A stretch of DNA of 64,000 nucleotides from Octopus sinensis (Eukaryota). Shown here one piece after another: positions 4,243 through 62,140 of the stretch. Position numbers and translations under genes: made by a program. The notes beneath the pieces were generated by a model that had not been told where the DNA came from, ran no database searches, and saw nothing but the letters and a program-made list of their open reading frames with translations. The stretch lies in the NCBI RefSeq assembly GCF_006345805.1, contig NW_021832829.1, forward strand, positions 248,001 to 312,000, read 5' to 3'. How positions within the stretch are numbered: the first letter of the stretch is position 1; each line of letters opens with the position of its first letter.

Positions 4243-4572
4243 AAGAGTTATCTTTTTGTTAAATGATAAACTAACACATCAAAAGATGCTAGGGTATTGA
4301 TTGATCTGAGTTCCTTGATAATGAGACAGGTCCAGCGTGACGATAATATAAATATCGACCTTTACAAAATTCTCAATAATTTGCTTGAAATTTAGTACAA
4401 GTTGAAATACGAAGGGATTTTCTTTAGAATCTTATATTTTCGGATGCATTGGATAAATATCTTGTCATAAATATACAGCAATTAGAGAGTCCATTATATT
4501 TAATTTATATAGTACATTGCCTGTTCATTTGATAATTTGTAAAATATTTATTAAATTTGGAAGGAAATAATT

Positions 4573-18786: not shown

Positions 18787-21700
18787 ATGACTTTTTCCGG
18801 AGTAAATATAGAGCCAACATTTGTCAATTTGGAAGGGATAGAACTGAATTCTGAAGAACATTTCAAAATTAGGATTTTAAATGTTTCTGATAAAAGTAAA
18901 CAAGTGAAGTGCTATACACAAAAATTACAAGTATTTTTTCCCTTAGTCTTTTATAACACAGGTTTGTCAAATGGTTACCAAAATTAATGAATTCCGTTTG
19001 GCTCCTGGGATCGATATACTATTTAAACTAAAATTTGTTATTCAAGAAAACAAAGAACACAACGAAATATTTATTTTACAAATCGAGGACAATCTTGTTG
19101 AAGTTCCTATCAGCATGTTAGCAATAAACGTTTCAAACGTAGAATCCCAACTCGTCCTTATTTAACAATTGAACCGTTTTATGATTTTGGTTCCAGAGTA
19201 GCAAAAAAAAGTATTTCACAAAAAGAAATAAATATTGAAAACCTCGGAACCGCCCCTGGAGAATTTAAAATAAAAAGATTTTCTGATTTTCCATTTAATG
19301 TTAACCCAAAACAGGGGGTAATTCAGGCAAAAAGTCACCAGACATTACAGGCACACAAAAACCTTTTTATTTAAACAGTTAGAAATGCTAATACATAAAG
19401 AAGGAGAATACTCTGAAACAATTGAATTGGAATTCGATCAAAGAACTGTTATGGTGGAGTTGAGAGGCCAGGTGATGTTGCGACGGCTTTATTTCGTGGA
19501 AAACGAAAACTCAAAAGAGCCAAAAAATTTTCTCAATTTCGGAAACGTTTATTACGGTTCAAATAAAGTCCAAACTGCATACCTGGCAAATATCTCTCCT
19601 GAAGAAGTTGTATTCGCTCTAATTCTGGGGGACGACATGGGTGATGAAAATGTTTCTCTTTATAATTTATTTCAAGGAAATAAAAACAATAAATGAACAT
19701 AAAGAAGACTTTCTGGCAGACTCCCCAATCTTTGTGACTCCAAGAGAGGGTATGCTGAAACCTTATGAAATAAGAAAAATTGAGTTTTGCTTCAGCCCCA
19801 GGTATTTTATTATAAAATAGTATACAAGGTATCCTCAGTCAAACCGAGGATTTAAATCTACGGAAAAACCATTTCCTGTACAAGAAATGATTTTTTTCGT
19901 CAAAATAAAAATTCCAGGGGAAGACTCTCTCAACAATAATAATAGTTTTTTGATTATTAATTTTTAGCAATAATATCTTTTCTACCACTCATAGGAAATG
20001 CTTTTCCTGTACAAATGAGTGTTTTCCCTCTTAGGGAACACGACTTCGGTGTTTTATCTGTAAAAGAAAAGTCCCGATATACATGCATTCTTACAAATCG
20101 AAATCGCTTTTTACGAATCAAATATCGTTTCAAAAGACTTGCCAGCTTTGTTATTATTCCCAAAGAAGGGATCATTCAACCTCAGGAAGAAGTTTCAGTC
20201 GACGTTGTCTTTGCTCCAAATCAGATTGGTATTTTCGAAATCCAACATTGTAGGTATTTTCTCATCATGTCAGTATTTGGAAGTCCTCGCTTTGGTCGCA
20301 GATGACTATGATCCTTTTAATCTATCAGAAAAAGTTATTGACTCTTTTAAATTCTACTTATGTGGCAAATGTGAATTAAAACCTCCAGCCATCAATCCCA
20401 AATTCAACTCAGGCTTGAGGATTCTTTATTTTCATTTTATAGGCATAACTCCTTTTATTACTAACGAAGTTGGAATAAATTGCAAACTTACTTTCAATGA
20501 AATTAATGATAAAGATCTGAGAAATGGACTAAATTTATTTTCAAAATCTTTAAATTTTAAAACGAAATTGAAGCAAAATTCCAAACAAATCCTAGCCGAA
20601 TCATACGTAGCGTTTCCTAATGATATGGCGAGAAGTATTGCTTCATATCAACAGAATCTAACTTACTTGTATAATATGAATTCGTAATATTTAAAGAACT
20701 CCATTTACCTTAAAACCAAGACATAATTATGTTGATCCAGATTATTCGTACACTAGTGAAGAGATCAAGCAGCGGAAAGATCACGATGAAAAATATATTG
20801 AGATGATTCACCATTTTTCAAAATTGAACAACAATAAAAGGTAAACCTTGTGTATTGTAAATAACTAAAATTAGAGAAGATATAAAACTTAACAAAAAAA
20901 TTGATTCAGACATTGAAAGTATGGAATCACTTAGCCCACCTCGCCTTTCTATCAAAAACATTTTTGAAGACAAATCAGGTAAATCTAAGTCTTCAATTTT
21001 AGAGATTCGATATATTTCGAGAGCATCATTTATGTTATTGAGCGCTAGAAAACTTAATAATATTGAAAATAATCTTAATGTAATTATTTTAAAACTATCA
21101 AATAGATAAATGAAAAAATCAGAATTAATCTACGAAAATGCGAAATTATCGAATGCAGTAGACGGCTTACTGCATATAATTTGTGCTTAATTCAGATTAG
21201 TTAGATTTTAAAAATTAAATTATTTTCAGACCCCATAGTTGTTGATCTTGGGAAAATTTGCGTCAATTCTGATTGCTCAGCTACAATTACAGTTTTTAAC
21301 GGATTAGATTTTTCAATTAAAATGACAACGAAAGTAGCAATGATATTAAAGTAATTGAAAATAGAACGACCATTCAGAAATAACAAATTCTGATTTACTC
21401 ACGGGTATTCTCCCAGCCAAATCCAAAACTTCATTTCCATTACATTTCCATTTTAAAAGTCCTGGGATTTTGATGAAGTGATATCAAATATTAATATTTT
21501 CAGATCAATAGAATACTGTATAAATGACCAATTTAAAGACAATATACTCATTATTGGAGAAATTGTTACTCCCCATTTGGAACTTAGCACAACAACTCTT
21601 ACATTAACTCCAACTGCTGGAATTTACGCATCGGAACGTATCAATATTATTAATATATCATTTTAGCTGTTAGAGGAGTAGTGCAAATTTATAACAAATT

Positions 21701-24700
21701 GAATTTAGCTACAGGTTTTACTTGGGTTCCCATATCGAACTCTAATGAACAAGTCTCGTTTTCAATCCGCCCTGCGATGGGTGACATAATTTTCGTAAAT
21801 AAATTTTAGGTATTGTTCAGGCTAACTCTTCGATTGATTGTGAAGTGGTTTATCATTCTTTTCTTACGAAGAATGAAGCGGAATTCAACCTAAAATATGC
21901 CAAAGAAACTATTGGATTGAAATGTAAAGCAAGGGCAACTACTTTTTTATAATCTGAGCAGATGGGATCTGCTAAAGTTGTCTCTCTCAATAACAAAATC
22001 GAGTTTACATCTCTTCCGCTATATCTGAAAGTCACCAAGCCACTTTATTTGTACAACACTAGTTCTAATCCAGCATTCTTCGACGTGAAAATATTTAGAT
22101 TTGTAATAATAGATTCCTGATCCAAACCCCATTAATGACCTGTCTGTGACTCCAATAAATGGAGTCATTATGCCAAATGAAATGATCGAACTTTCCGTGT
22201 CTGTAATTTCAAGAGAAATATATAAATTTGACTGCAAATTGATAATAGCGGTCCATTCATCTCCAAGCATTGAAGTAAGAATAAGTGGCACTTCATGTCA
22301 AACATTTCTTGAAATTAAACCAGTTGAGAAAATATTTATTTCTATATATAGGAAATGTTAAAATTTGAGGGAGTTTATATTGGATCTGTTTTTTCATTGC
22401 CTTTTACAATTGAAAACAAAGTAGTTTTGCGATTTATAATATCAATTAGTCTCAAAACGAAGCCAAAGTTGAGTTTCATTTGTCAGAATTCATGGATTTT
22501 AGTCTTCGGACTTGTATTCACAACGAAAGACGTTAAATTATATATGTTAATTATTGGATTAGAACTTCGAGAAAACAAAACAGACAATACATACACTATA
22601 TTTAGTCAACCAGAAGAAAAAATGGAACTAGAAGCGGTTTTCAGCCCAACCGAGGTTTGTATATTTCTTAATATTTAGATTGCCGCATACGATTTTGATA
22701 TCCCCATTTCAATAAACGGAGTATTTATAAAAACAGAAAATAAATCATCAAAAAGGTGTTCGATCATATCAAACGATTATTCCCGACATACAAATACACG
22801 ACTAAATATAACATCACTCAAGATTTCTGCTACTGCACTAAGACAGATTCTTGAAATTTCCTCAAAAAATGTCGAATTTGTTATTTCTTCTAAAAACCTT
22901 GATAACAATTCAACATATCCCATGATAAAAGTATATACTACTTTACCAATCTTAAGCCACTACTTTTTAAAAACTGTTCTTCTAAGACAATTGAATATAA
23001 AATTAATATCCAAGAAATTGTTTATGATGGATTCCAGCTAGTCGATCTGTGTTATTCGGACAATTCTATTATTTCCGTAAATGAGAATTTCATTTCTAAC
23101 CAACTTAAACCTTTGGAGAGCAATGAAATATTGGTCCGTTTAAATCACGGTGAACGTTCATAATTTTATCAAAAGGCATTAGAGAACCAATATCCGCCAA
23201 ATTAAATGTCTATATAAATGGGAATTTAGAAGTTTATCAGTCAGTATCTATTGGGGTCGTGTTTGAATTGGAAAATATCACATTTAATCCATGCGAGTTG
23301 ATAATCCCTCCAATTCCACTATCTCTTGAAAAACAGCTTAAAGTTACACTTTTTGCAAAAAATTATAGAAAGTAAAAATAGAGATTACCTAATTTTTAGA
23401 GATTCTTTCATTCGAGTGGAACTCCCGGAATTAGGAAATAAAACAAATCTCAGAGTAGAATTTAAAAATAGAAACGGTTGGTTAAACTAAATTAATTTTT
23501 TTACTTAGAAATAAAGGAAAGTCACTCAAATTCAATCAAAAAAATTAAATGTTTTGTCTTTTTTAAAAGTGAAATTCCGATTTCTATTTGTGAATATGTT
23601 AAATTTATAGACGATATGAATAACTGGTTTGGTTTATTTTTATTTAGTTGATTATTAGTTTTTATTTGAAGGTCATTGCTTCTGCTGATAATTCATTGTT
23701 TTCGTGCTGCACTTTCCTTGGGGAGCATCAAAACGGGTGGTTTGTGGGTGATAAAATTGTAAAATATGATTATTTACAAAATTAGACATTTAAATCTAAC
23801 CAATGGATGAATAATAATTCACAAAAAATGGCAATTTTTGGCCCATTATCTGATACCAACAGCATGGCAACGACAGTTTCTATTCACTCTCTAAATACGT
23901 CGTCAATTAATTCTATAAGAGAACTTACTACCCTCAATAGTGACAAATAATTTGCTAAAGCTCTAGATATTAGTGAAAGTCTCATAGCTGAGAGAAAATA
24001 TTTAGATGACATGGTAACAGACGAAACAATGAAACCTTGCGTTCGTGATTTTATAAGTACGTTTGGATTTGTATTTCCGTGTTTCCGTAAAAATAATTTT
24101 GAATATTATATGTGTGTATTAAATGTTATACAAACTTGGTTTTCCCATTTTTCAAGTCCGAATGGTTATACTTCCTTCAGAATCCCTGAGACTTTGCAAA
24201 AGTTTACATTAACATTTTATAATTCAAGGGCATTTTCTAAGACAAATGACAAAATCAGAATACTTAAATCCTCTAAATTTGGAACTTTTGACCAGCTATC
24301 CATCCTGGAAATTATACAACACATTTGTGGACGAAATATCCCTGGAATCCCCCAAGATTATTCTCTTCCATCAGACCCAAACGAAAGGGTCAATATGATA
24401 TTCTGGATTTATCAAACATTGCTTAACTTTATTAAGTTATTTGATTCGGATATAGTTTGTTAGAAATCAAGGTGGAATAGTCAATTGGCTGCAACCCGAA
24501 TATTTAATGGAAGAATCTGACTTTAAAATGTTTTCGAACAAATTATCAGTTTCTAATAACACATTTTTAAGCAAAAATCAAGCCAATTTACTTTATAAAT
24601 TGGCTTCCGAAGTTTCGGAAGAACTTTTCCATATTTTATTTCACGCCTTGTCAAGATTTGCATGGATGGAATTAATGTTGCAGCTTATAAAGGTTTCTGG

Positions 24701-27700
24701 TTTTATGCAATTAATCAGGTTCTTGTCTTACCAAAATTACAAAAAACAAACCTGCAGGCATTTGACACCATTTCAAATCAACCTGAAATTACTTCTTCCA
24801 ATATTTTTTCAGATCATGAACTTATTCTAGTTAATTGGTTAAACAAAGTTTATCGATGGAGCATTACTAACATTTGGAAAAAATTCGACCCGCAAAATTG
24901 TTTAAAAATCAATAACTAAATAAATTTAGATGCTCTGTTGGAAAATAGGCATGTCTTGAATATTGAAACAGATTTGAAAGATTCGATCATTTTGATAAGT
25001 GTAATCTTATCGTATTGCCCCTTTTTGGTACTTAATACTATTTAAATTTGTTCCCAGGCTCCTGATACTATTTTTCAAGTTAAAATAAATCCTCAAACTA
25101 GCGAGGAATATTTCCACAATGCTTTACTTTTGATGAAACTAATGCGGTCCATATCTTTGGACTATGATATTGTGGTTTGATTTTAATTAATTCTCGATTT
25201 TCAGGCAATAGAAATATTACAGGGCAATCAAATAATCATGATTTTACTTTGTTACTATTTGTATGAAAATCTCAGGACGTTGCTACCAAAAGAAACTGTC
25301 ACATTCAACTCTTATTTTTACATCGAAGTAGAGAAAAAGGTGTTGCTTATTTTTATCACTTTTAGTTAAAAATTACTAATCCTTCACGTTTTCCTATTAC
25401 ATATGTACCTCTGATTACCGGTGATGGGTCAAAAGACTTTTCCCTAAAAAATCACAATTTAATAAAATTGCCTGGCAATAGTTCCAAATTAATCGATATA
25501 AAGTTTTTTGCAAGATTTGTTAAACCGTCAAACGCAACTTTTTATCTTATTTCAAAGTGTCCGGGATATATTGCTGCAGCGAATATTGCTATCAATTTAG
25601 AAGGAAATGTTCAGGAAATTGTACCTTTGGTTTGTAAACAAGATAAATTTATATTTGCGATTTTAGGGTACTTTGAATTTTGCTGCTCCATGTTATTCGT
25701 CTCAAAAACTCAAATTTCCAATCAAAAATCCTTTCAAACAAGATGGCGACTTTGAAATTAAAATAATAGAGGATCCAAAAAAACTTGATCCTATTCACAG
25801 TTGTATCAGTAACTTGACAACACTGGAGGCTTCGAAGAATGTTTCATCTCTTTATTCAAGGGGTAATTTTTTGATTCCACATTTGTAATAGAAACCATAA
25901 AAATGAAATCATTTCACTGTCACACAAAATCGCTTTTTATAAAATCTGGTTTCACTCAATCCCTTAAACTGGAATTTCTTCCTTTGTTCAGCGGAAAACA
26001 TGAAGAATTACTTATTCTTACATGCAAAGATGTGGGCGAAATAATATACTTTCTTGATGGGAAAGACCTTAATCCAGTGCCTATGCAAGCCACGGCAGTA
26101 ATTGGAACGCATCCTGACCAGTACAACAATTGTTGTATTATATCATAATGTATTATATCTATAGCACCTAGTCACGTTTTACATTGGAGATGTGAACCTA
26201 GTTCTAGAATAAATAACATATTACTTTTACCTCTATTCAATCCTGTATACGAAAAAGTTATATCAAGTCTTGTTCAATCTGTAAATATGAATATCAAATA
26301 TTTAATAGTGCATGTCTAAAAGTGAGTATCAGGTTAGAAAAACGGCAGGAACCATGATCAATAAAAATCTGATTTCAAGAACAATCGAAAGTTTGAAGAC
26401 AGGTCAAAAAAACCATACTGTAACTTGAAAATAGTTTATTCAAGGAACACGTGAATACAAAAATCTTTAAAGTAGAAATAACGGACACGCGAAATTTTTC
26501 TGTCCCAAAGGTTATTGAAGTTCCGTTAGAAACACGACTCAACGACTTTAAATATTCTAAATACAGTGATATATTATCGAAACATGGTATTAAAAATATG
26601 ATTGTTTCAGAGGAGCTTGAGAAAGGAATATTGGAAGTCCCTATTAGTTTCTATAGTAAAGATATTGGTCAATACTGCTGCACTATAAAGTTGAAATGCA
26701 ATGAAGATGTCAGATTGTTCAAAATAATTTGCTCAGTTAATCCAAAAGGAATTCAAGCAAAACTAGAAATGCACTCTCCTGTGCAACAATCGGTGATTCA
26801 GAACATTCCAATTGTAATATTTATATTTTACTTTTAGGTAAATAATTCGAACAATATATGGAAATTAAGTGCAGAAATTGAGGGATCAGAATTTTCGGGA
26901 CCAAAGCAATTAGCTGTGAAAGCGGGAGAAACAATCAGTTATCCTTTAACTTTCTCTCCATTGAGTAAAAAAGCGGTCCATGTTTGAATATTAAGCTTTC
27001 TAACTATCTAAAGGGGAAATTGACCTTGATCAATAGATTGGATAATATTTCAAATATTTTTGATTTGGTCGGTCTTGGAGAAAAATCAACAGCACTCGAA
27101 AACATCGTGATGACCTTACAAGTCAGAACACAGTATTTTTAACTTTTTGATAATTTTAGTGTTACAAAATTTCTTAAGGTTCCTAATGATTCATTTGGTC
27201 GTAGAACTTACAATGTAGTTTTTTACTCTATTTAAGGTTGAAACAAACATTGAGTTTCTTAGCGGTCTATCACGCTTTACTTCGTTACCACAGCGAAATA
27301 CAAATTACACCTTCACTCTTTCTCCCTTGAAACGTGGAATCTATAAAGGAATTATCCAATTTACCACCTGCGAGAGTCCGATTGCGTTTGAAAATAAAAA
27401 TATTTCATTTTTATAGGGAAATTGACAGCGACGGAGACGACATTCTCTCCTACGAATTTGAAAACAATAGCAAAAATGATTCCATAATTTGGTACGGAAT
27501 TGAAATTCAAGTTGATCCTCCAGCTCCAGAAAAATCATTGGATATTAGTTGTCCATGCCATGTAACAATATAATTTTACTGCTATCATAGAGTAAAACTT
27601 CTATACAAGTTGAAGTTACCAATCCTGCAAATTATCCAATTCATTTTCAAGTCGGGATAATCGGCCAGGATTTAGAAGGGCTAAAAGAAATTATCGTAGA

Positions 27701-29495
27701 AAAAAATGCGAGTTACTTCTACGAATTAGAGTACGCTCCGTTATATGTGGGTAGTAGTAAGGGAAGGTAATTTATTTGTATTACAAAATAGTCTTATTTT
27801 CTACAACTCCGAAACAGGAGAATTCTGGTATGAAATTCTAATGACAGCAAAAAATCCTTTACCGCTTAAAATTCCTCTCATTTCATGCGAAATTGGATGG
27901 TTATTTTACAAAAAATTAGACCTCATAGTTGTAAGGAGTTTACAATAACGATTCCCAATCCCACTCAAGAAAGCGTGGTTTTAACACCCCAGATAGAAAA
28001 TGGAGAGTGCTTTCGAATTTCGGAATTGACCGAATGTGGTTTAAATATTCCACCCAACAGCTCTACTGATTCAAAAATCATTTTCATCCCCACAAATATA
28101 GGACGTAAAGGACATGAAGCGACAATTTTCTTTTATTCTCTCAAGTATTTCTACAACAATGATATTGTGTAGTTTGGAAAACTTAGTTATGAGGTAGAAG
28201 GGTTCGGATGTCTTCCAGGAATTCAAGATATACTTACCGTTACTTCATACCCAGGATTCGAATCAACGACTTTTCTCCCATTTCGCAATCCGTTCGATTT
28301 TCCAATCAAATTTTCTTTAAAACTCTCAAGTAAACTAATTAGATTTATGAGCAGATGACTTGGAATTTAAATTAAATCAAAAAATCAATTCTCAGTTACA
28401 AATCAATGAAATGATGGATATTCCCTTAACTTTCAGTCCAAACATGACAATTTCACATTATAATTCGATTTTATCTGTCATTGTGAGACAGAAAAACTCT
28501 AAACTTTGGAGTTTTGAAAAGTAAAATTCTTATTTTGACGAATAAAGCAACGACGGGGAATTGGAATTTCTAGATTCAATCGAATGGACGTTTCCTATCG
28601 AAGGAATAGCTCTTAGCCTGAACAAAACCTATGAAAAACATTTCGTTTTTCAAACTTTATCTAGAAGTCCTTTGGAGAAAGTATATAGATTTATTATGGA
28701 CCCACAAAAAGAAACAAGTGTTAATGTCCTTAGTTTTTTGGAAGCTGAGGAGATATTATTGCAGTGGGAAGGTTTTTAGAATATTGATTTATTAAGAAAT
28801 GGCATGCATATCTAGTAAATTTGAATACAGATGGGCTACTGAAATTAGCGAAATAAATAACGTGTCTGTAGAAGTTATCAAGGCAGTTGAAATCGACGAG
28901 CAGGATCACTTACTTATAAAAGTTATTTTTTACAGTGGAAAACCTATAAAGTGGAATTTATTTCATTATTTGATAGTTACTCTGCAAAGCTTCAGTTTAC
29001 TAAAATCTGTGGAAAACGCTGGAGTTTTCCATTCTCATTTAAAGCCAAAAATCCTATTCCTGACGACACAATAATTATAGAATCCATTGGACTAAACAAA
29101 AACTCGAGCGTATCTTTCCAACTCTCCAGTCACAATAGGTATTATTTATTCATTAATTAAAGCCTTCAATACAAATTCGATGCTTATTTTGAAAAGGGGA
29201 GCGACAAAGAACTATCCGTATCTCCTTCAAGTGGAATATTATCTCCAAATAAATCTGAAAGTACTGAAATATGTATAACCTTCCACCCTTTACAATACGG
29301 AAGAGAAAAGCGTGGGAGTTTGGTTTTAAAAGTATGATGGATGTATAATATATGTAGACCGATGATGTTTTGTGGCTATTTAATGTCATTGGAAAGATTC
29401 CTGATTATCATCCTCCAGTAATTCTAAGGAAGCCTTTTGAAAATATAGTTAATGGACACCAAAATCATTTAAAATTTGATGATTATGTGGTTTAA
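18787..29495 (+). CDS. CFAP47: Cilia- and flagella-associated protein 47 (Ig-like ASH repeats plus CH domain); many tiny introns
   Basis: N-terminus (YDFGSRVA, NLGTAPGEF, NFGNVYYGSNK...NISPE) resembles CFAP47. CH domain LVNWLNKVY...ETDLKDSIILISVILSYCPF. C-terminal YGREKRGSLVLK...WLFNVIGK.P.Y.PP. The 3' end could extend to about 29545. Confidence 0.8.
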
Positions 29496-29699
29496 AATTA
29501 CTAGATTGATATCATTAGGAGACACGGAGATAATTCTTGTATTAACTGATAATTAGTGTAATTCACTAACATGTTTTTAACAATGAATCTTTTAAAAATA
29601 ATAAGAAACCTTCAATTACAAAAAATTTCTTTTAAAAATAAAATTTTTTATTTTCAAATCTGAAATTCTAAAATAATAAGCTTTTAAAATAATTTATGT

Positions 29700-30320
29700 G
29701 ATTAGCACATTAATGGACCCGGCATATTAATGGACCGATAGCATAAATTGCAAAATAAATTATATAAATAAATATTAACCCATTGTAGAGATATGTTTTT
29801 ATATAAATTGTTGGATTTGACTAGGGAAAAACTTGAAAAAATTGGGAAATTCAAAATTTCATCAATAGCAGAGAATTCATTAGACAAGAAACAACGATTT
29901 CGAAACAACCATAATGAGAGAAGATATCCGCTTTGTTTTAAACAAATATGTTTATTGCCAAGTATTGGCTATTTATTTATTAGCTAGTCAAAAAATTTGA
30001 TGGCAACCAAGCCACCTATTACTCCAATCATTGCCAGAGGTCCTGGAGACCGTTATATCGCAGATCTTATAGATCTCAGAAGATCTTCAATAATTATTTA
30101 TATGAAGGTTCTACTGGTCATTGACTCATTCACTAAGTATGCTGTTTTAGAACTAGCAAAACTGGAAGTTTTGGAGTTTACTTCAACATTACAAAGAGGA
30201 TCGTATATGATTACAATCGAACAAAACATGACACAACCAGAAATATTCCCTTTCAAAGTTTTATGGGAATTAAAAAAAACCAGACGAGAATGAAATAAAC
30301 GAATTAATGGCATTCGAATA
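29700..30320 (+). mobile_element. rve-type DDE integrase fragment (KRBA2/SCAND3/Ginger-like)
   Basis: PPITPIIARGPGDRYIADLIDL...KVLLVIDSFTKY is the first catalytic Asp region of an integrase core; internally deleted. Confidence 0.6.
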
Positions 30321-31720: not shown

Positions 31721-32019
31721 AGTTTCTCTTGTCCTATGAATTTTTTATTGTAATGCGCCTGCTTAAACGCTAGAAAGCTCGTGATGCTTCATCCGGAAGT
31801 CCATTAATATTTGGGCTCCCTATGTGATAAGATGTCCATGACGGCATCACTCGTCAAACATAATCGCAACTTTCTGCACAGGTAACCCTTAAGAGCCGAA
31901 CCCGGGACCAATAAGGTTATTAGATTAGTTGTGAAATTGTTCTCACAAATTCACTGGCACGGGGAGTCGAATAAACAAGAGAACATTAGAACAAAAAATC
32001 ATTTATTATTATTAATCCA

Positions 32020-34732
<2,713 letters not shown>

Positions 34733-42780: not shown

Positions 42781-43721
42781 TTAATCATTATTTTCGTCAC
42801 TTGAACTACTATAACCAACGACGAGTGTGGGCTCAAATTTGACACAGCACTCAGTCTTAATTTCCTCCATGTCGGGAGCCTCTTGCTTTATTTGTCGACT
42901 TAAAACGTCAAAATCGTTAATTTTTGTTATCTTGAAAGAACTCTTTAAATTTGTTGCATTCCGTTTTTTGCTGGAATATTCCAATTCTTTGGTAACCGAC
43001 TGGAAAAGCAATTCCTCGTCATCAATTTGATTTTTCTGTTCTGCCTGGAGTGCAAGTAAATCACTGGAATAAAATAAAAAGGCAACCGCAAGGCCTGTTC
43101 ATCTTGATCTTCCTCGGTGGGCTGATCTTGCTCAATGATATCCTCGTAGTTGATCACGTTTTTCTTGATGAGATTACTGTCTTGAATAATTTCTAATGCC
43201 TCCATGTTTTCCATTTCCTTGTAAGACTGCTTCGTCCGGCTTTCGAGCAATTTCATGGGGTTGTTCGCCTCTTCTTCTTTTTCTGCCTCCATTTCTTCCT
43301 TTGCCTGCTTCTGTGCCATTCTAAGCGCCTGAAATGCTCTCGTAGCTCCAAATTCCATGGCATAATCCATGTTGGCCAAATCGGTTTTGAATGTGATTTC
43401 GGACACACAGTTTGGACAGCGAATGTAGAACCTCATTATGGTCAGTCCCAGGTAGTCCTCACCATACACATCCTCCTTCCTTGCGTTGAATTTCTTTGCC
43501 TTATGGATATACTCTCCGCATGTATTACATCTACCATTGTATTTATAGCTTGATAAACCTCATATTAAAAGGGGCCATCACCCTAATGTAGAATTGGTGA
43601 TTTTTACGTCCTCCTATTCGAGGGATGTTGTTGGGATCAAAATCGGGGGGATAATATTTCTATAAATGTAATATATATTTATATATATTACATTAAAAAC
43701 TTTCCTTTCAGTTCCAGTCAT
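42781..43721 (-). CDS. YJU2: Splicing factor YJU2 (CCDC94)
   Basis: [59 protein letters not shown]...FKTD and [11 protein letters not shown]. Confidence 0.92.
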
Positions 43722-44191
43722 TTTATCACTACAAGAACTATTATAAAATTAAATATATATTTTAATTAAAATATTATATAAGTTCAAAATAAATATTTAA
43801 AATCTCAAATTTAATATTCTCTCTTGAGGCTTGCATACTTAGAAATACATGTACGCAACACTTTGAAGCTTACTCTTCAGTATCCAAAGAAATTTTGGTT
43901 ATGCTTTATGTGCGAGTCACTTTTTTTTCTTAAAAAAGTTTTTTGTGCAAATATTGCAAAAGTTTTATTTTAAAATTCTAAAGGTCAAATTTTTGAATTT
44001 AACATTTTCTTATCCTATAAAATCAAGTCTACCGTTAAATAAAAAATGTGTAAGAGAACTGAACTAAAAACCCAACAAGATTGAAAATTAATAAATCTGA
44101 TAGGCTAAATTCTTGCTGTTTTGTGTTTATTTGAGAAAGTATAAAATTGGTCAGAAAAATATTCAATAAATATAAAATATAATGTTATAAA

Positions 44192-46540
44192 TTAGTCGTA
44201 TCTGTTTTCTGTTATTATCAGACATTTTGGTTTATGCTTACTAGGGTAGATGGGCCCTTCATACCAGCGCTTGGTCATCAAATCAAATATATCAGTTTCC
44301 ATTACAAATTCAGATTTTTCCTTTTTATAGCCACTTACAACAAATAGTTTGTGGAAATATAAAACAGTCCCTAAATGTGATCGTGGATTCTGAACACATG
44401 TTAAAATGGACCAATCGTTTCTGACCACGTCATACTTTTCAATGAAATATACAGGACTCCATCGACCGGATATCTGCCACTCCCCTCCTACAGCGAGGAG
44501 AAACATATCATATGATATTAGTCGGTGTCCAGCACGGGAAATCAGCATATTGGACTTTTCTACCCATTTTTTTGAATTTTCGTTAAATTCTAAAGTCAAG
44601 TGAAGTGCTGGTCCTCCAGGAATAAGTTGGCCTCCAGAAATATAGACAATTCCTTGATGAAAGGCAACGGCGTGATTCATTAAACTGAAAGGGAGAGGTT
44701 GAAGCCATTCCCATTTGACACCTTCATCAAGAATTTCTACGCATCTCAAAACACGCTCTTTCTCAAGAATATCGGTTGTGAAAAGAGGACCATGTTCAGT
44801 CAAATATTTTATGTAGCCATCGTTTCCAACTTGTTTAGTTAGCTGTACTCGTTCGCATAAGAGCATTTCCTGAAAGTCTTCAAAATCTTTGTCAAGACCA
44901 AGACATTGACATCCTCCAGTAATCACAAACCTGGATCCTTCAATTGCCACTGCACATCCATATCTGCTTGGAATCATTTCTGTGTCTACATGCCAAATTG
45001 TATTGGACGTGCTGATATTTAAAGACATAATACTTGACAAGGAACGCCCATTTATCGACTTTCCACCAATAATGAGTATTGAATTATTTAGGAAATTTAT
45101 TTCGAAATCTGTTACATTTTCTACATGTTCACAAATACGATATGGTTTCCAAGACAAAGGATGAAAATTAGGATCGAGGCAATAAATCACCGAAGCGTCA
45201 CTTGCTCCTAAAATTTTATTTTTCTTAAAACCGTCTCCTGTATTTATAGAAATGATTAGATCCTTTTTCCTGAGTTTTGGCCGAGCTTCTGAAATTTATA
45301 TATATCAAAAATAGTGCCTGTGCGATTTACTTGGGGCCAGGAAATCATGGTGATATCAAGTATTCAATTTGTATAAAAATGTATTTTTATTGTGTAATAC
45401 AAGATATACGTGCTCTCTCACCTGATGGATTAATTTAAAAATAATCGCAAAGATCAATTCTCTCAATCAATTAATATGTTGTATCGATTTGAAACACGAA
45501 AGACACAAATCTAGTATAACTCCGAAGAGTACTGGAATTATTTGATCGACCAAAATTATTTCTTTATATAACACATATTATCGATACACATTTTTTTGAA
45601 TTCGAAATTATTTGATCGATACAGCCGATCATTTGAACTCAGATATATGATCTAATAAATTACCGAAGAAGTCGTTTCTCCAATGACTTACATTATCAAA
45701 TAGTATTTTTCTACACTTTAATCTGCAAATATCGTTTAATTATTCAAAAATAGCTGTAAAATGGTACTTATCGAACTCAACATTTTTGTACAAATTTAAA
45801 TAACATTGGTAAACGACCATTTTACATATTCTGCAGAAATACATAAATTACTCGTACTGTTTCTATTCAGTGAGAGCGTCAAAATTTTATAAAGCTTTTC
45901 AAATATTTTTAGATTGTTGAAAAATCTTGTGGCTTATATTTATTCTAATTATTCCGCTGATTTTCCGCATTTTGTCCCAATCTTTCAAATCAGAAAATCA
46001 TTGAACAATAGTTATCTAATTTCAGCGTTAAAATAATATTGAAAATGACAGTGGACATTAAAAATAATATTTTTTGCATTGTAAATAAAGAATTATGAAT
46101 TCTTTCAACAAACAATTATTAACTTTTTTGTGTTCTCATAAAATTATGGAACTCTATTTTCACCAAAAAATTAGTATATATGAAGGAATTAACAAAATAA
46201 ACATTCTTTAGTATAAGTGAAACTTTTTAAATACGAATTAATACTCCTGAGTAAAAAAACTTCATAATAGTGAATAATTATTCTTTTGGGTATTCATTTC
46301 GAATTATACAAAGCACAAAAAACTCAATGTGCGTGGCATCTTGTGATATCTTATCAATCCAACGATGATTTGACCAAAAAATCGAGACTAATTTTTATTA
46401 CTCGATGGTAACTTTTGAAGGATATATTAGTCAAGTTCTTTATTATTCTTAAATTGGTGTCGATATTTTAAATTCGTTGTCGAAAAAACTATTATCATTT
46501 CCAAGCTGTGTTTTTTTGCTTGTTTTATACATTTTTTAAG
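44192..46540 (-). CDS. BTB-BACK-Kelch (KLHL family) protein
   Basis: Kelch repeats in ORF 44192-45190 (IVYISGG, LLAVGG, IEKYD...W, LFVVSG, W..GP). Upstream BTB-like fragments YHRVIKISLDF (about 46400) and FTIMKFFYSG (about 46260). The 5' boundary is uncertain. Confidence 0.7.
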
Positions 46541-47098
46541 TATATACTAGTTTAAAAAAGCAAATTTTATTTTAAAATACAATCTCGGTTCTTTTTGGCT
46601 GGAGCTATTCTTAGATAGAGCAGCTTTATTTGGCTAGAATCTTTCTATTCCAACTCTTTAATTCATAGGATTCATAAATTTCAACAATTTGGTGATATCA
46701 TGACCTCAAATACGGCATACTAACCACAGATGCGAGTGCAAAGAGAAATAATTGCTAAATCAACCCATTAGTCAAGTGACGAGGGCAAATATAACATTAT
46801 CGTACTAATTCGAAATAAATTAGGTAACTCAAAATACTTAAATTATATCTTTGAAATAAAAATTATTTTTACTTGAAAATTATTTCAATTGTATTATAGT
46901 CACGAGGAAATTTGTGGTTACATGAATTAAAAGTTTTTGAAATGTTAAAAAATAGACAATCAAAAAAATTAATGGTACCATTTGTATAAATCTGCGGTTT
47001 GAGGGAAAAATTGGAATCCATTGTTAAATGCGCTTGATGTCAGCGTTACTACGCTGATTCTGCACTTGAAAAGCAAATATGAGCGTTAGTCATAAGTC

Positions 47099-47739
47099 AT
47101 GAGTTACCAATTCTATAATGATGATAAGTGGAATGAAAATTTTTATCTCGATCTCGAGCCGTCTGAAAACCTAAAGAAAAATCAGATCAGCGGTCAATTT
47201 AATCAACCAGATTTTACACAGTTTTCACCCTTCTTTCCTGATATAATGAAATTTCCCGATAACTATGAAAAAAATTCATGCTCTATGATATATCCTAATT
47301 ATAAGTCTTCGAACACGGATTTTTACCCTTCGAGTATCTATAACTATTTAGAAGATATTCAAAATAACGCCGATTCTAATTTCAAACATCTATGGGATAG
47401 CAAACTAACGGAAAAAAACTTGTCCACAAATACAAATTATTTAAAAGACTCACTTGGAAGGTATGTTGATTTTTTTTATCCATGAAAGTGAATAGTTCTG
47501 GTACTCATCGAACTAGACAGACATACACTAAAGATCAGACAAATCTCTTGCAAATTGAATTCCAAAAAGGGAGATATCTCACTAAAAGAAGAAGAAAAGA
47601 ATTAGCTTTGCAGACAGAACTATCAGAAAGGCAATTGAAAATCTGGTTTCAAAACAGACGAATGAAGTGGAAAAAAGAAAACAATATTGAATCTCTTACT
47701 GGTCCAGATAGCGATTATTACTCACTCTCTTTACAATAA
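47099..47739 (+). CDS. Lox5: Central-class Hox gene, Lox5-like homeodomain protein
   Basis: Homeodomain [10 protein letters not shown]...[12 protein letters not shown]...[19 protein letters not shown] followed by NIESLTGP, similar to the spiralian Lox5 KLTGP parapeptide. Two ORFs join in frame if intron 47461-47495 is spliced. Confidence 0.8.
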
Positions 47740-56569: not shown

Positions 56570-57764
56570 CAGTCCGACCCCCAAATGGGGCACCAAGTGC
56601 CCCAAAATGCGGGGGTGCCCCAAAAACAGGGGTTTGTTATTTTTTTAAAAATTAAACCATTAATAAACATCAAAAAACATTTTTACTAAAATATTCAGTT
56701 ATTTTCTTTTTATTTGTAGAGTTTTGTCTGATATTGTTCGTCAATTTCAGCCGAAAATCAAAAAAATCTCGGAGCATACTTGGTGCAACATTAGAAGTCT
56801 TTCCAGTCATCCATGCATTTTGAGAAGATGAATACAATAACCCAAAATCTTGAACATCAAAATTTTTTAGACACCGAGGTTTTTTATATTTTCCAATAAT
56901 CAATGGATTAAGTTTTTCCCCGATTAAACTGCAGCATAGAAGAACAGTGAGTCTTTCTTTCCCTTGTTTATAACCAAAACACGGTTCGCCTTGTTCAACA
57001 AATGATTTTTGAGTTCTTTTTATAAAAAGCGCAGTTTCATCACAATTAAATATATTCTCAGGTCCATATTTTAATACTTTCTGGTCATATTTTTCAAAAT
57101 AATTTTTCACATAAGATAAATCACATGAAGCTTTTTCACCACATATTGACTTGAATTGAAGTTCATGCCGCAATTTAAATCTATCAAGCCACCCATTGGA
57201 AGCTTTAAAAGAAGTAAATCCAATTTTTGAAGCTGTAACTAAGGCAATTTTTTTCAAAATAGGGCCTGAAATCGGAATTTTATCTACGCGTAGTCTTTGA
57301 AATATTTCAAAGACTTGATCATCAAATTTATCTTTATCGGCTTTAAATGTGTCATATTCCTCAGAAATAGTATTGCCGTGTTGCAAGAAAGGTACAATAT
57401 TTCGTTTTATTCTTGATATTGTTCCTTTACTTGTGTTGTACTTTTTCATTAGTTGCCTCTCAGATAAATTTTTCTTCAAAATTTCTTTAGCAATCTTCAA
57501 TTTAGTTTCGTAATCCATAACCACAACAATAAAAATATAAATTGAAAATAAAACAAAAAATAATTAATTTATTATAATTTTATTTTATTTTTAATTCCTT
57601 ATAAATGATTTTATGGTGCCCCAAAAATTCCATAATTTTTTATCGATTTTTATTTTTTTTCTGCCAAAATGTACTTTTGGAATAAAGTGCCCCAAATTGC
57701 GGGGGTGCCCCAAAATCCGAGGGTGCCCCACCCCTGGGGTCTGCCCCATTTTGGGGTCGGACTG
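56570..57764 (-). mobile_element. pogo/Tigger element, internally deleted, with intact 284-aa ORF (56670-57524)
   Basis: TA TSDs; about 23-bp TIRs CAGTCCGACCCC(C/A)AAATGGGGCA; HTH-psq, CENP-B HTH (PISGPILKKIA, FKASNGWLDRFKLRH), IFNCDETALF, ERLTVLLCCS and AWMT; GTGCCCCA subterminal repeats. Confidence 0.92.
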
Positions 57765-61052: not shown

Positions 61053-62140
61053 CAGTGAACAAAAATAAAAACTGAACACGCTTTTTCTCAAATATTTACA
61101 ATGGGACAATATTACAAATATGTTTCAAATTAATTATTTACATGAAATAAAGTATTTTACGTTTTTTAGTTTTTTTGAGAAATATATATTTATGCGCTTT
61201 TTTAAGAAATCGAAAATTCAAAACCAAAAAAAAAACTGAACAAATTTAATTAATATCTAGTATGTTCACCATTAGCTCGAATTACATTTAGTATTCGGCC
61301 TGTCATGCTATTAATGAGACTTTTTGCGTATTCTGTTTTAAGGTCATTCCAAATCGATGATATTTCTGCAAATAAATGTTCCTTTTTCAACAATTCTCTT
61401 CCTTTGATTTTTTCTTTAATAAAGGCCCAAACATTCTCTATGGGGTTCAAATCTGGGCTTTGTGCAGGCCATGGTAGCAATTCGACTTGAAAAAAGCGCC
61501 TTGCTATCGCCGAAGTATGTTTCAGATGATTGTCATGTTGGTAACTAGGATCTTTATGTTCGATTTTGTTCAGAAATGAGATAATTTTATTCGTTAATAT
61601 GTTAACATGCAAAGCTCCACCCATCTTCTCTTTTATCAAAACCAAATTAATGAATCCAATAATGCTCATGGCACCCCATAACATGATAGTTCCTTTACCG
61701 AATTTTACTGTCTTTGTCAGATTGTTTGTTAAATATTTTTCCTTGCGATTTCTTCATACAAAAGTTCTTCCATCACTATTGTACATATTAAATTTACTTT
61801 CATTACTTAAAATAACTCGCTCCCAAAATATTTTGAGAGCATATTCAATGTTTGGCATAGCGTCAATTATTCAAGTTTACAGGTTTTTGGTAAGAAATGG
61901 TCTTGTATTTATTGTCCTTTTCGTCCAAATTGGAATCTTATTTCACATACTTTCAAGATTTCTGTATTTCTTGGTTTTACGAAAATTTGTGGATTTTCTC
62001 TTTTTTAAGAATACTTATAGGCTGTAAGTTCTAAATAATTGAGATATACTCGATAGAATTTAATAGAAATTTTCTATCAAAATTTTACACCTAGTGGATA
62101 TTTTGTCTTTAAAGGCTGACGTTACTGACATTTGTGGCAT
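61053..62140 (-). mobile_element. Degenerate Tc1/mariner element
   Basis: TA|CAGTG end at 61053; MLWGAMS, YQHDNHLKHTS, LPWPAQSPDLNPIENVW DD34E-type region; frameshifted 5' part; second TIR not found. Confidence 0.85.

What the first reader, a model, noticed from the sequence alone, without database searches (positions are those of the whole stretch)
47459..47496. Hox hexapeptide destroyed by a 4-nt loss and apparently turned into an intron, with an ATGA stop-start overlap
Seen: the 5' ORF ends ...DFFYP* (TGA 47483-47485) and the homeobox ORF starts MKVNSSG (ATG 47482). Inserting ATGG into TATCC^ATGAAA gives F-Y-P-W-M-K, the canonical PBX-binding hexapeptide, in the expected position. GTATGT (47461) to TAG (47495) is a 35-nt GT-AG intron that rejoins both ORFs in frame ([13 protein letters not shown]) while removing the broken motif. 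Possible readings: (a) intronisation rescued a frameshift and produced a hexapeptide-less, possibly PBX-independent Lox5; (b) termination-reinitiation at ATGA yields a homeodomain-only protein; (c) assembly error at the ATGG/ATG repeat. Reading (a) would be a clear case of intron gain changing Hox cofactor use in a simplified animal.
Basis: partly seen in the sequence, partly recalled or inferred. Interest (0 to 1): 0.8.

Follow-up and report, generated by a model that had tools for sequence, protein, structure and literature searches.

The report
Broken PBX-binding motif in dicyemid Lox5
A Hox gene (a Lox5 relative of the dicyemid gene DoxC) has the codons of its cofactor-binding motif interrupted by a 4-base gap; the gap sits inside a short intron-like stretch whose removal would restore the reading frame, but sequence alone cannot show that this splice is used or that the gap is not an assembly error.

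Summary
ORF1 (47099-47485) ends ...DFFYP*. ORF2 (47482-47739) starts MKVNSSG and encodes a Lox5-type homeodomain. Only one short GT-AG interval (47461-47495, 35 nt) joins the two frames.

The broken YPWM motif is very probably a real relic:
- A 4-nt-deleted [YF]PWM[KR] arises by chance in under 0.2% of 45-nt stretches.
- DoxC of Dicyema orientale reads ...YLK(11 aa)PWMKFNNANTS...KRTRQTY, collinear with YLK(11 aa)P|[15 protein letters not shown] here.

The genome is dicyemid-like: 49 curated introns measure 22-32 nt.

The proposed intron is half convincing:
- **For:** its donor outscores all 49 curated introns and 99.8% of exonic GTs.
- **Against:** its acceptor scores below all 49. A well-scoring AG lies 28 nt from the donor, and splicing there gives a dead-end product (...LGSE*). 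In 48 of 49 curated introns the first AG at least 22 nt from the donor is the one used.

The candidate is not the canonical Lox5 intron, which is phase 1 in a mollusc; this one is phase 2.

My rough odds:
- real deletion rescued by the 35-nt splice: 0.4
- unrescued lesion: 0.2
- assembly or allele artefact: 0.2
- remainder: old intron with a chance relic, or recoding

Reads and RNA-seq would decide.

The parts
47099..47460 (+). Exon 1 coding part of the Lox5-type gene (ORF1 up to the candidate donor). It starts MSYQFYN, which resembles the MSSYF N-terminal motif of Hox proteins.
   Evidence: 128-codon ORF directly abutting the homeobox ORF on the same strand. It has no homologue in the 5.8-billion-protein search. 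Its tail YLK...P is collinear with DoxC. N-termini of other Lox5 proteins for comparison: MSSYYSN, MSSYFSN.
47461..47495 (+). Candidate 35-nt GT-AG intron, phase 2: GTATGTTGATTTTTTTTATCCATGAAAGTGAATAG
   Evidence: Only short GT-AG interval that joins the two frames; its removal gives a 201-aa open product. Overall intron score is 3.76, above 63% of true introns in leave-one-out scoring; 2.5% of exonic decoys score as high. At 35 nt it lies above the 22-32-nt range of the 49 curated introns.
47461..47469 (+). Donor site AAG|GTATGTTGA
   Evidence: Donor sub-score is 4.23, higher than all 49 curated introns. Only 0.2% of 507 exonic GTs score as high.
47470..47477 (+). T8 run. It reads as D-F-F-Y codons in the ORF1 frame, or as a pyrimidine tract if intronic. 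It also forms a U UUU UUU slippery heptamer.
   Evidence: There are no T runs of 8 or more in 11.4 kb of curated exons. One extra T, or a -1 slip here, would also fuse the ORFs (...[11 protein letters not shown]), as read from the frames.
47474..47487 (+). Hexapeptide relic: TTT TAT CCA (F-Y-P, ORF1 frame) abutting ATG AAA (M-K, ORF2 frame). The Trp codon plus one base (4 nt) is absent relative to [YF]PWM[KR].
   Evidence: Chance occurrence is under 0.2%. DoxC has VVPWMKFNNANTS at the collinear position.
47482..47485 (+). ATGA: start codon of ORF2 (47482-84) overlapping the stop codon of ORF1 (47483-85)
47487..47488 (+). Competing proximal acceptor AG, 28 nt from the donor. Using it gives ...DSLGSE* (122 aa, no homeodomain).
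   Evidence: Acceptor sub-score is 1.29, close to the mean of true introns (1.32). In 48 of 49 curated introns the first AG at least 22 nt from the donor is the one used. Product translated.
47494..47495 (+). Acceptor AG of the productive 35-nt splice
   Evidence: Acceptor sub-score is -4.19, below all 49 curated introns; 63% of exonic AGs score as high. The 12 nt upstream contain 9 purines.
47496..47739 (+). Exon 2 coding part (S)SGTH + homeodomain + Lox5 peptide + tail, ending at stop TAA 47737-39
47503..47682 (+). Homeobox (60 codons, THRTRQTY...MKWKKEN). DNA-contact residues R5, I47, Q50, N51 and M54 are kept.
   Evidence: Pfam PF00046, E = 1.2e-19. 67-72% identity to mollusc Lox5 and 61% to DoxC. 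Closest solved structures are Antennapedia, Scr and Ubx homeodomains.
47683..47709 (+). Lox5-specific C-terminal flank NIESLTGPD
   Evidence: Aligned with NN(L/I)xKLTGP(D/N) of named Lox5 proteins and with NIPRLTGPEGDY of DoxC. The motif is cited as Lox5-specific in PMC6543705.
47748..47753 (+). AATAAA, likely polyadenylation signal 9 nt after the stop codon

Best explanation
The locus is the divergent DoxC paralogue (a Lox5-type central Hox gene) of a dicyemid.

Its ancestor read ...YLK-11 aa-(Y)PWMK-linker-homeodomain as one continuous coding stretch, as DoxC does. A recent 4-nt deletion between the ATG..ATG repeat of CCATGGATGAAA removed the Trp codon plus one base and created a stop codon.

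The gene can still make a homeodomain protein only if the 35 nt at 47461-47495 are spliced out. That interval has a very strong donor, a T8 tract and a weak acceptor. The product would be a 201-aa Lox5 protein lacking the hexapeptide and the 8 residues before it. Transcripts left unspliced, or spliced at the nearer AG (28 nt), carry a premature stop codon and would be expected to be lost.

Shown: the lesion, the relic, the homology and the quality of the splice signals. Inferred: the deletion event, actual use of the 47460/47496 junction, and any change in PBX dependence.
For: **Relic**
- Chance under 0.2%.
- ORF2 M1-K2 aligns with M88-K89 of the DoxC motif PWMK. The ORF1 tail lies on the same diagonal (YLK + 11 aa + P; shuffle p = 0.008 at that diagonal), and the linker after MK is also similar (p = 0.04).

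**Recency**
- Every retained base of the motif still matches, and both ORFs are otherwise intact: 128 and 85 codons in a 31-33% GC region.

**Intron plausibility**
- The genome splices 22-32-nt introns: 49 curated, mean 26.6 nt; 11 of them (the phosphofructokinase gene) were picked by my recall of the conserved human enzyme sequence, not by a tool alignment. Published work on Dicyema sp. gives a median of 27 nt with about one third at 30 nt or longer.
- The donor at 47461 outscores all 49 curated introns and 99.8% of exonic GTs.
- The whole-interval score exceeds 63% of true introns, and only 1.3-2.5% of exonic bases lie inside an equally intron-like in-frame interval. A random lesion or error would therefore rarely fall in one.
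- The spliced product is open and in frame.

**Not the ancestral intron**
- The mollusc Lox5 intron is phase 1, 6 codons before KRTRQTY. This one is phase 2, 4 codons before HRTRQTY.
Against: - The acceptor at 47494-95 is worse than all 49 curated acceptors.
- A normal-looking AG at 28 nt should be preferred: 48 of 49 curated introns follow the first-AG rule. Splicing there gives ...LGSE*.
- 35 nt lies outside the curated length range, although that set was capped at 32 nt by how it was built.
- No transcript, read or orthologue of this gene exists in any searchable collection. Neither the splice nor the deletion is observed.
- An undecayed relic is what an assembly error or a rare allele would also produce.
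Confidence: 0.4

Rival explanations
1. The lesion is real but not rescued. The gene copy in this assembly is a very recent pseudogene or null allele of a redundant DoxC paralogue. Transcripts stay unspliced (stop at 47483) or are spliced at the 28-nt AG (...LGSE*). At most a trace of homeodomain-only protein is made from ATG 47482, by leaky scanning or reinitiation at the ATGA overlap.
For: - The best acceptor for the strong donor is the 28-nt AG, which gives a dead-end frame.
- DoxC provides a second Lox5 gene in dicyemids (PMC6543705 and PMC6736024).
- The relic is undecayed, so the event is recent.
- The ATGA overlap exists.
Against: - Both ORFs are otherwise intact.
- The paralogue is reported in all three dicyemids surveyed.
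- The lesion falls inside an interval of a kind that covers only 1.3-2.5% of exonic bases, which would be a coincidence under this reading.
- Reinitiation after a 128-codon ORF is inefficient by established knowledge of eukaryotic translation.
- ATG 47482 has T at position -3 (TCCATGA).
Confidence: 0.2
2. Assembly or consensus artefact, or a minor haplotype captured by the assembler. The living gene reads ...DFFYPWMKVNSSG... as one 214-codon ORF with no intron at this point.
For: - The relic is perfect on both sides, and the missing 4 nt lie within a short ATG..ATG repeat.
- If the window comes from the published D. japonicum assembly, that assembly merges Platanus (Illumina) and Falcon (PacBio RS II) contigs, adds GapCloser and HaploMerger steps, and derives from pooled animals with 1.24% heterozygosity.
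Against: - A 4-nt deletion outside a homopolymer is an uncommon consensus error (my own estimate; no error spectrum was measured).
- No frameshift showed up among the 42 curated exons (11.4 kb) of this window, although they were defined as open frames between frame-joining introns, so this is a weak check. There are no Ns in the window.
- An intact coding sequence would carry a top-0.2% donor, a T8 run and an AG 32 nt downstream (28 nt here plus the 4 missing bases). That would invite frame-destroying splicing.
- A random error would hit such an interval only about 1-3% of the time.
Confidence: 0.2
3. 47461-47495 is an ordinary, older intron of this gene in the region where Hox genes usually carry one. 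The protein lost its hexapeptide long ago, and FYP|MK inside the intron is a coincidence.
For: - The donor and T tract look like a long-established intron.
- Hox genes normally have an intron between the hexapeptide and the homeobox (Tegillarca Lox5).
- Dicyemids are reported to conserve ancestral intron positions (PMC2222250).
Against: - A chance relic has probability under 0.2%, and lower still in the correct frames.
- The stretch is collinear with coding DoxC residues 72-96.
- Phase and position differ from the mollusc intron.
- An old intron would not be expected to keep the worst acceptor and a competing in-range AG.
Confidence: 0.1
4. The frame is restored at the T8 run rather than by splicing. 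This could happen through a homopolymer miscall (true T9), transcriptional slippage, or -1 ribosomal frameshifting on U UUU UUU. The product would be ...[15 protein letters not shown]...
For: - T8 at 47470-77 is an in-frame X XXY YYZ heptamer two codons before the stop.
- One extra T, or a -1 slip, puts translation in the ORF2 frame (frames).
- Homopolymer length is the commonest long-read error.
Against: - There is no stimulatory RNA structure downstream: z = +1.7, and 196 of 200 shuffles fold at least as well.
- This reading makes the YP of the relic a coincidence.
- It ignores the collinear P86 of DoxC.
Confidence: 0.05

Closest known systems
DoxC of Dicyema orientale (BAA85262.1 / Q9U8Q5) and its reported paralogue in Dicyema species
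   Same: A short Lox5-type Hox protein (182 aa, against 201 aa for the spliced model here). It shares the homeodomain (61% identity), the LTGPxxDY tail, a YLK-11 aa-P...MK.N..T linker architecture, and an origin in a genome with tiny introns. Published work reports a more divergent DoxC paralogue that keeps the Lox5 motif in three dicyemid species.
   Different: DoxC has an intact VVPWMK. Here the Trp codon plus one base is missing and the frames are split. The N-terminal 110 residues are unrelated at sequence level. Which dicyemid species the window comes from was not established.
Intronization of exonic sequence (new introns made from coding sequence through cryptic splice sites, as described in nematodes, fission yeast and human retrogenes)
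   Same: A coding stretch flanked by a pre-existing GT and AG would be removed as an intron. In human retrogenes, indels combined with intronization kept the total change a multiple of three (PMC3565874). The same arithmetic applies here: 4 nt lost plus 35 nt spliced makes 39 nt.
   Different: Splicing is not demonstrated here. The intron would be only 35 nt, and it would remove a defined functional motif. Comparative surveys in Cryptococcus and Schizosaccharomyces describe intronization as rare or low-frequency (PMC2740785, PMC3629103; titles and abstracts).
Hox proteins that lost or bypass the YPWM hexapeptide (Drosophila Ftz, Abd-B class; hexapeptide-independent PBC contacts)
   Same: A Hox homeodomain protein lacking the Trp-containing motif that inserts into the PBX/Exd pocket. 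Solved Hox-PBC complexes are among the closest structures (2R5Y, 1B8I, 1B72, 1PUF). A Pbx gene exists in dicyemids.
   Different: In those cases the motif was lost by substitution or the proteins use other motifs (from my own knowledge). Here the loss would come from a frameshift plus splicing, and no interaction data exist.
Canonical Hox intron between hexapeptide and homeobox (for example Tegillarca granosa Lox5)
   Same: It lies in the linker a few codons upstream of the homeodomain and has GT-AG boundaries.
   Different: The mollusc intron is phase 1, sits after the hexapeptide, lies 6 codons before KRTRQTY and is 9 kb long. The candidate here is phase 2, starts before the hexapeptide relic, lies 4 codons before HRTRQTY and is 35 nt long.

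Membership tests
Hox gene, Lox5 orthology group | Antp-class homeodomain | tested here: met
   PF00046, E = 1.2e-19. Best named hits are mollusc Lox5 proteins at 67-72% identity.
Hox gene, Lox5 orthology group | Lox5-specific peptide C-terminal to the homeodomain (..LTGP..) | tested here: met
   NIESLTGPD aligns with the LTGP of named Lox5 proteins and of DoxC.
Hox gene, Lox5 orthology group | Hexapeptide (YPWM-type) encoded upstream of the homeodomain | tested here: not met
   Only a split relic (FYP | MK) is present. No other YPWM-like motif occurs in ORF1 or anywhere in the window.
Hox gene, Lox5 orthology group | Placement within the Lox5 clade in a phylogeny | not tested
   No tree was built. 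The assignment rests on the flank motif and the best hits.
Dicyemid-type spliceosomal intron | GT...AG boundaries joining two open frames | tested here: met
   Removing 47461-47495 gives a 201-aa open product.
Dicyemid-type spliceosomal intron | Length in the narrow local range | tested here: not met
   The candidate is 35 nt against 22-32 nt for the 49 curated introns (mean 26.6, sd 2.4). That set was capped at 32 nt by how it was built. Published work gives about one third of Dicyema sp. introns at 30 nt or longer.
Dicyemid-type spliceosomal intron | Donor context like known introns | tested here: met
   Score 4.23, above all 49 curated introns. Only 0.2% of exonic GTs score as high.
Dicyemid-type spliceosomal intron | Acceptor context like known introns, and use of the first AG at least 22 nt from the donor | tested here: not met
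   Score -4.19, below all 49 curated introns. An AG at 28 nt precedes it, and 48 of 49 curated introns follow the first-AG rule.
Dicyemid-type spliceosomal intron | Junction observed in RNA | not testable with these tools
   No transcript or protein of this gene is present in any collection.
Intronization (intron born from coding sequence) | The intronic stretch is homologous to coding sequence in a relative | tested here: inconclusive
   The stretch is collinear with DoxC residues 72-96 (fixed-diagonal shuffle p = 0.008; linker p = 0.04). This rests on a single relative at paralogue distance.
Intronization (intron born from coding sequence) | No intron at the same position and phase in relatives | tested here: inconclusive
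   The mollusc Lox5 intron differs in phase and position.
Termination-reinitiation at overlapping stop and start codons | Overlapping AUGA | tested here: met
   47482-47485.
Termination-reinitiation at overlapping stop and start codons | Short upstream ORF or a dedicated ribosome-tethering element | tested here: not met
   The upstream ORF is 128 codons long. No element was sought or recognised.
Programmed -1 ribosomal frameshift | In-frame slippery heptamer X XXY YYZ | tested here: met
   T TTT TTT at 47470-47476 in the ORF1 frame.
Programmed -1 ribosomal frameshift | Downstream stimulatory RNA structure | tested here: not met
   47478-47570 folds more weakly than its shuffles (z = +1.7).

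The most novel reading that the evidence does not exclude
In a genome whose introns are about 26 nt long and have almost no sequence consensus, a stretch of Hox coding sequence containing the PBX-binding hexapeptide has become a new 35-nt intron. It may first have been an optional in-frame 39-nt 'exitron', then made obligatory by a 4-nt deletion. The result would be a Lox5 paralogue that cannot use the classical hexapeptide-PBX contact while its sister gene DoxC still can.
Probability: 0.3. Interest if true: 0.65.

Novelty: new variant of a known kind. Interest (0 to 1): 0.45.

Why it matters
If the splice is real, this would be a dated, base-resolved case of an intron born from coding sequence in an animal. 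It would also change the cofactor interface of a Hox protein in one of the most simplified bilaterians. Both the birth of introns in tiny-intron genomes and hexapeptide-independent Hox function would then become testable on a single small gene with an intact paralogue as control.

If it is an artefact or a null allele, the value is limited to flagging a gene-model problem in a dicyemid assembly.

Tried and rejected
1. **Relatives of ORF1.** None were found among 5.8 billion proteins. Closer relatives of ORF2 were sought by the exhaustive representative search and by a search with DoxC. No dicyemid sequence other than DoxC turned up, so no orthologue comparison was possible.
2. **Paper supplements.** The supplements of the two dicyemid genome papers hold no Hox sequences.
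3. **Length spectrum of all GT..AG pairs.** This was meant to show the intron population directly, but there are too few introns against the background. I replaced it with introns curated by frame and homology.
4. **Branch-point motif.** No usable consensus emerged (28 of 49 introns lack YTRAH), so the choice between the 28-nt and 35-nt acceptors could not be settled this way.
5. **Other splice combinations.** Donor 47465 with either acceptor, and donor 47461 with acceptor 47488, all run into stop codons or the wrong frame.
6. **Alternative reading through the ORF2 frame.** This needs an extra A in the A7 run at 47411-17 plus a 24-nt intron at 47465-47488, giving ...RLTWKVLNSSG. I rejected it because it needs an unsupported indel and discards the relic.
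7. **'Collapsed ancestral intron'.** The idea was that GTGAATAG after ATGAAA is the remnant of an intron. I rejected it because the phases do not match.
8. **-1 frameshift stimulator.** None was found.
9. **Babylonia Lox5 locus.** The gene is too long to fetch; Tegillarca and Elysia were used instead.

Full report
**1. What is in the sequence**

On the + strand, ORF1 (47099-47485) ends ...CTT GGA AGG TAT GTT GAT TTT TTT TAT CCA TGA, i.e. [13 protein letters not shown]2 (47482-47739) begins ATG AAA GTG AAT AGT TCT GGT, i.e. MKVNSSG.

The two ORFs overlap as ATGA, and ORF2 lies in the -1 frame relative to ORF1.

ORF2 is a homeodomain (Pfam E = 1.2e-19). Its C-terminal flank [13 protein letters not shown] matches the LTGP peptide of named Lox5 proteins.

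ORF1 has no detectable homologue. It does start MSYQFYN, which recalls the MSSYF start of other Lox5 and Hox proteins.

GTATGT begins at 47461 and an AG lies at 47494-95. Removing these 35 nt yields an open 201-aa product ...[16 protein letters not shown].... No other GT-AG interval under 56 nt joins the two frames.

**2. Which organism**

The window has 31-40% GC. It carries LINE, pogo and Tc1-like transposon remains and has very short introns.

In the phosphofructokinase gene (minus strand, 34732-32023) I chose 11 junctions as those whose joined peptide matches the conserved human enzyme sequence as I recall it; no tool alignment was run. These introns are 23-28 nt long. A SMARCC-like gene has a 25-nt intron.

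A curated set of 49 introns measures 22-32 nt (mean 26.6, sd 2.4). This matches the published dicyemid values:
- 26.2 +/- 1.9 nt in D. acuticephalum (PMC2222250).
- A median of 27 nt in Dicyema sp. (PMC6543705).
- 36.7% GC and 49% repeats in D. japonicum (PMC6736024).

Only one homeobox lies in the 64 kb, in line with the unclustered Hox genes reported for D. japonicum. The species itself was not established.

**3. Is FYP|MK a real hexapeptide relic?**

Three lines of evidence say yes.

- **Chance.** A [YF]PWM[KR] motif with one 4-nt deletion appears in only 0.08-0.17% of random 45-nt stretches of matching composition, and about a third of that in the required frames.
- **The one dicyemid relative.** The exhaustive search of 1.84 billion representatives returned DoxC of Dicyema orientale (P0079, BAA85262.1). 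DoxC reads ...SYLKSKASEVPHNVVPWMKFNNANTSQFDHKRTRQTY. BLASTP aligns ORF2 from its first residue, so that M1-K2 pair with M88-K89 of PWMK (61% identity over 84 residues, including LTGPxxDY).
- **Collinearity upstream.** On the same diagonal, ORF1's YLK (114-116) pairs with DoxC YLK (72-74) and ORF1's last residue P128 pairs with P86. Exactly one residue (W87) plus one base is therefore missing. The tail scores p = 0.008 against shuffles at that fixed diagonal and the post-MK linker p = 0.04. This support is modest but independent.

With 61% homeodomain identity to DoxC, a divergent N-terminus and a retained Lox5 peptide, the gene fits the 'more divergent DoxC paralogue' reported in three dicyemids.

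**4. Is 47461-47495 an intron?**

I scored it against the 49 curated introns and against GT..AG decoys inside 11.4 kb of curated exons.

- **Whole interval.** The score is 3.76. That is above 63% of true introns in leave-one-out scoring, and only 2.5% of exonic decoys score as high. In-frame intervals this intron-like cover only 1.3-2.5% of exonic bases. A randomly placed lesion or sequencing error would therefore rarely fall inside one.
- **Donor.** AAG|GTATGTTGA outscores all 49 true introns, and only 0.2% of 507 exonic GTs score as high.
- **Acceptor.** The acceptor at 47494-95 (preceded by ATGAAAGTGAAT, 9 purines in 12) scores below all 49 true acceptors and like an average exonic AG.
- **Competing acceptor.** The AG at 47487-88 lies 28 nt from the donor, a typical length, and has a typical acceptor score (1.29 against a mean of 1.32). 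In 48 of 49 curated introns the first AG at least 22 nt from the donor is the one used. Splicing there gives ...DSLGSE*, a 122-aa product without a homeodomain.
- **Branch point.** No branch-point consensus could be extracted to settle the choice.

In short, a donor is very probably recognised here. Productive use of the distal AG is possible but is not what the local rules predict as the main outcome.

**5. Is it the ancestral Hox intron?**

In Tegillarca granosa Lox5 the intron follows FPWMRAAMNG. It is phase 1, lies 6 codons before KRTRQTY and is 9 kb long. The Elysia exon 2 boundary is consistent with this.

The candidate here is phase 2. It starts before the hexapeptide relic and ends 4 codons before HRTRQTY. 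By position and phase it is not the same intron. If it is spliced, it is new, and the ancestral intron must have been lost. DoxC genomic DNA, which would test this, is not available.

**6. Other ways to bridge the frames**

The T8 run (47470-77) is an in-frame U UUU UUU heptamer. One extra T, or a -1 slip, gives ...[11 protein letters not shown]... in the ORF2 frame.

There is no downstream stimulatory structure (z = +1.7). This reading also leaves the YP of the relic and the collinear P86 unexplained.

Reinitiation at ATGA after a 128-codon ORF has no support beyond the overlap itself. ATG 47482 also has T at position -3.

**7. Artefact or biology?**

The relic is undecayed on both sides, so the event is either very recent or not biological.

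If the window comes from the published D. japonicum assembly, that assembly merges Illumina and PacBio RS II contigs from pooled animals with 1.24% heterozygosity.

Against a plain error:
- A 4-nt loss outside a homopolymer is unusual (my own estimate).
- No frameshift showed up among the 42 curated exons (11.4 kb). They were defined as open frames between frame-joining introns, so this check is weak.
- The window has no Ns.
- The coincidence with an intron-like interval would be a 1-3% event.

Against rescue by splicing: the acceptor problem described in section 4.

My rough weighting, from order-of-magnitude priors and not a computation:
- real deletion with productive 35-nt splicing: 0.4
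- real but unrescued lesion (recent pseudogene or null allele, possibly with a trace of homeodomain-only protein): 0.2
- assembly or allele artefact: 0.2
- older ordinary intron with a chance relic: 0.1
- T8 slippage or miscall: 0.05

**8. Comparison with what is known**

- The gene itself (a DoxC paralogue) has been reported; its lesion has not. No held paper mentions a dicyemid hexapeptide.
- Intronization is an established but rare route of intron gain. In human retrogenes, indels plus intronization summed to multiples of three (PMC3565874), and the same arithmetic applies here (4 + 35 = 39).
- Hox proteins without a functional YPWM are known (Ftz, the Abd-B class; my own knowledge).
- Pbx is present in dicyemids.

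If confirmed, this would be a new variant of known phenomena, made attractive by its base-level clarity and by the intact sister gene.

**9. Verdict**

The 'intron' has a first-rate donor and a poor acceptor, and neither its use nor the reality of the 4-nt gap can be shown without reads and RNA.

Noticed in passing
window 34456-34430 (minus strand): In the phosphofructokinase gene, the junction ...SNIIQK | GGTVIGS fits the conserved enzyme sequence (from my recall of it) only if a 27-nt interval starting GA (GAAAGAGAATAATTAGTCAATAATTAG) is removed. That means either a non-canonical GA-AG intron or a base error at the donor. The only GT-AG alternative (48 nt) deletes 7 conserved residues.
   Followed up: partly
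window 47079-47102 (+): A 7-codon upstream ORF (MSVSHKS*) ends in TGA overlapping the ATG of ORF1. This is a second ATGA stop-start overlap in the same gene. ATGA is common in AT-rich DNA, so it may mean nothing.
   Followed up: no
window-wide, 49 curated introns (e.g. 17116-17140, 19117-19142, 32977-32954): Introns show almost no consensus beyond GT[AT] and AG. Their length is tightly set (22-32 nt), and 48 of 49 use the first AG at least 22 nt from the donor. AGs at 20-22 nt are skipped in 5 introns. This suggests the acceptor is chosen by measuring distance from the donor.
   Followed up: partly
curated exons, 11.4 kb in total (e.g. within 19000-30000 + and 32000-34700 -): Six in-frame GT..AG intervals of 24-45 nt inside supposed exons score as intron-like as typical real introns. 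They could be unrecognised 3n introns or optional 'exitrons', which ORF-based curation cannot detect.
   Followed up: no
window 4551-5998, 56670-57524, 61250-61684: Transposon remains: a reverse-transcriptase ORF (RVT_1), a pogo/Tc5-like transposase (HTH_Tnp_Tc5 + DDE_1) and a Tc1/mariner-like DDE_3 fragment. This fits a repeat-rich small genome.
   Followed up: partly
window 42945-45190 (minus strand): The upstream neighbours of the Hox gene are a Yju2/Saf4 splicing-factor gene and a single-exon Kelch-repeat gene. No second homeobox lies in the 64 kb, so this Hox gene is not clustered.
   Followed up: partly
window 47411-47417 and 47465-47488 (+): An A7 run in ORF1 and a 24-nt GT-AG interval (GTTGATTTT..., with the same first 9 bases as the intron after 17648, read) allow a second, less likely reading...RLTWKVLNSSG..., if the A run were one base longer.
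   Followed up: partly
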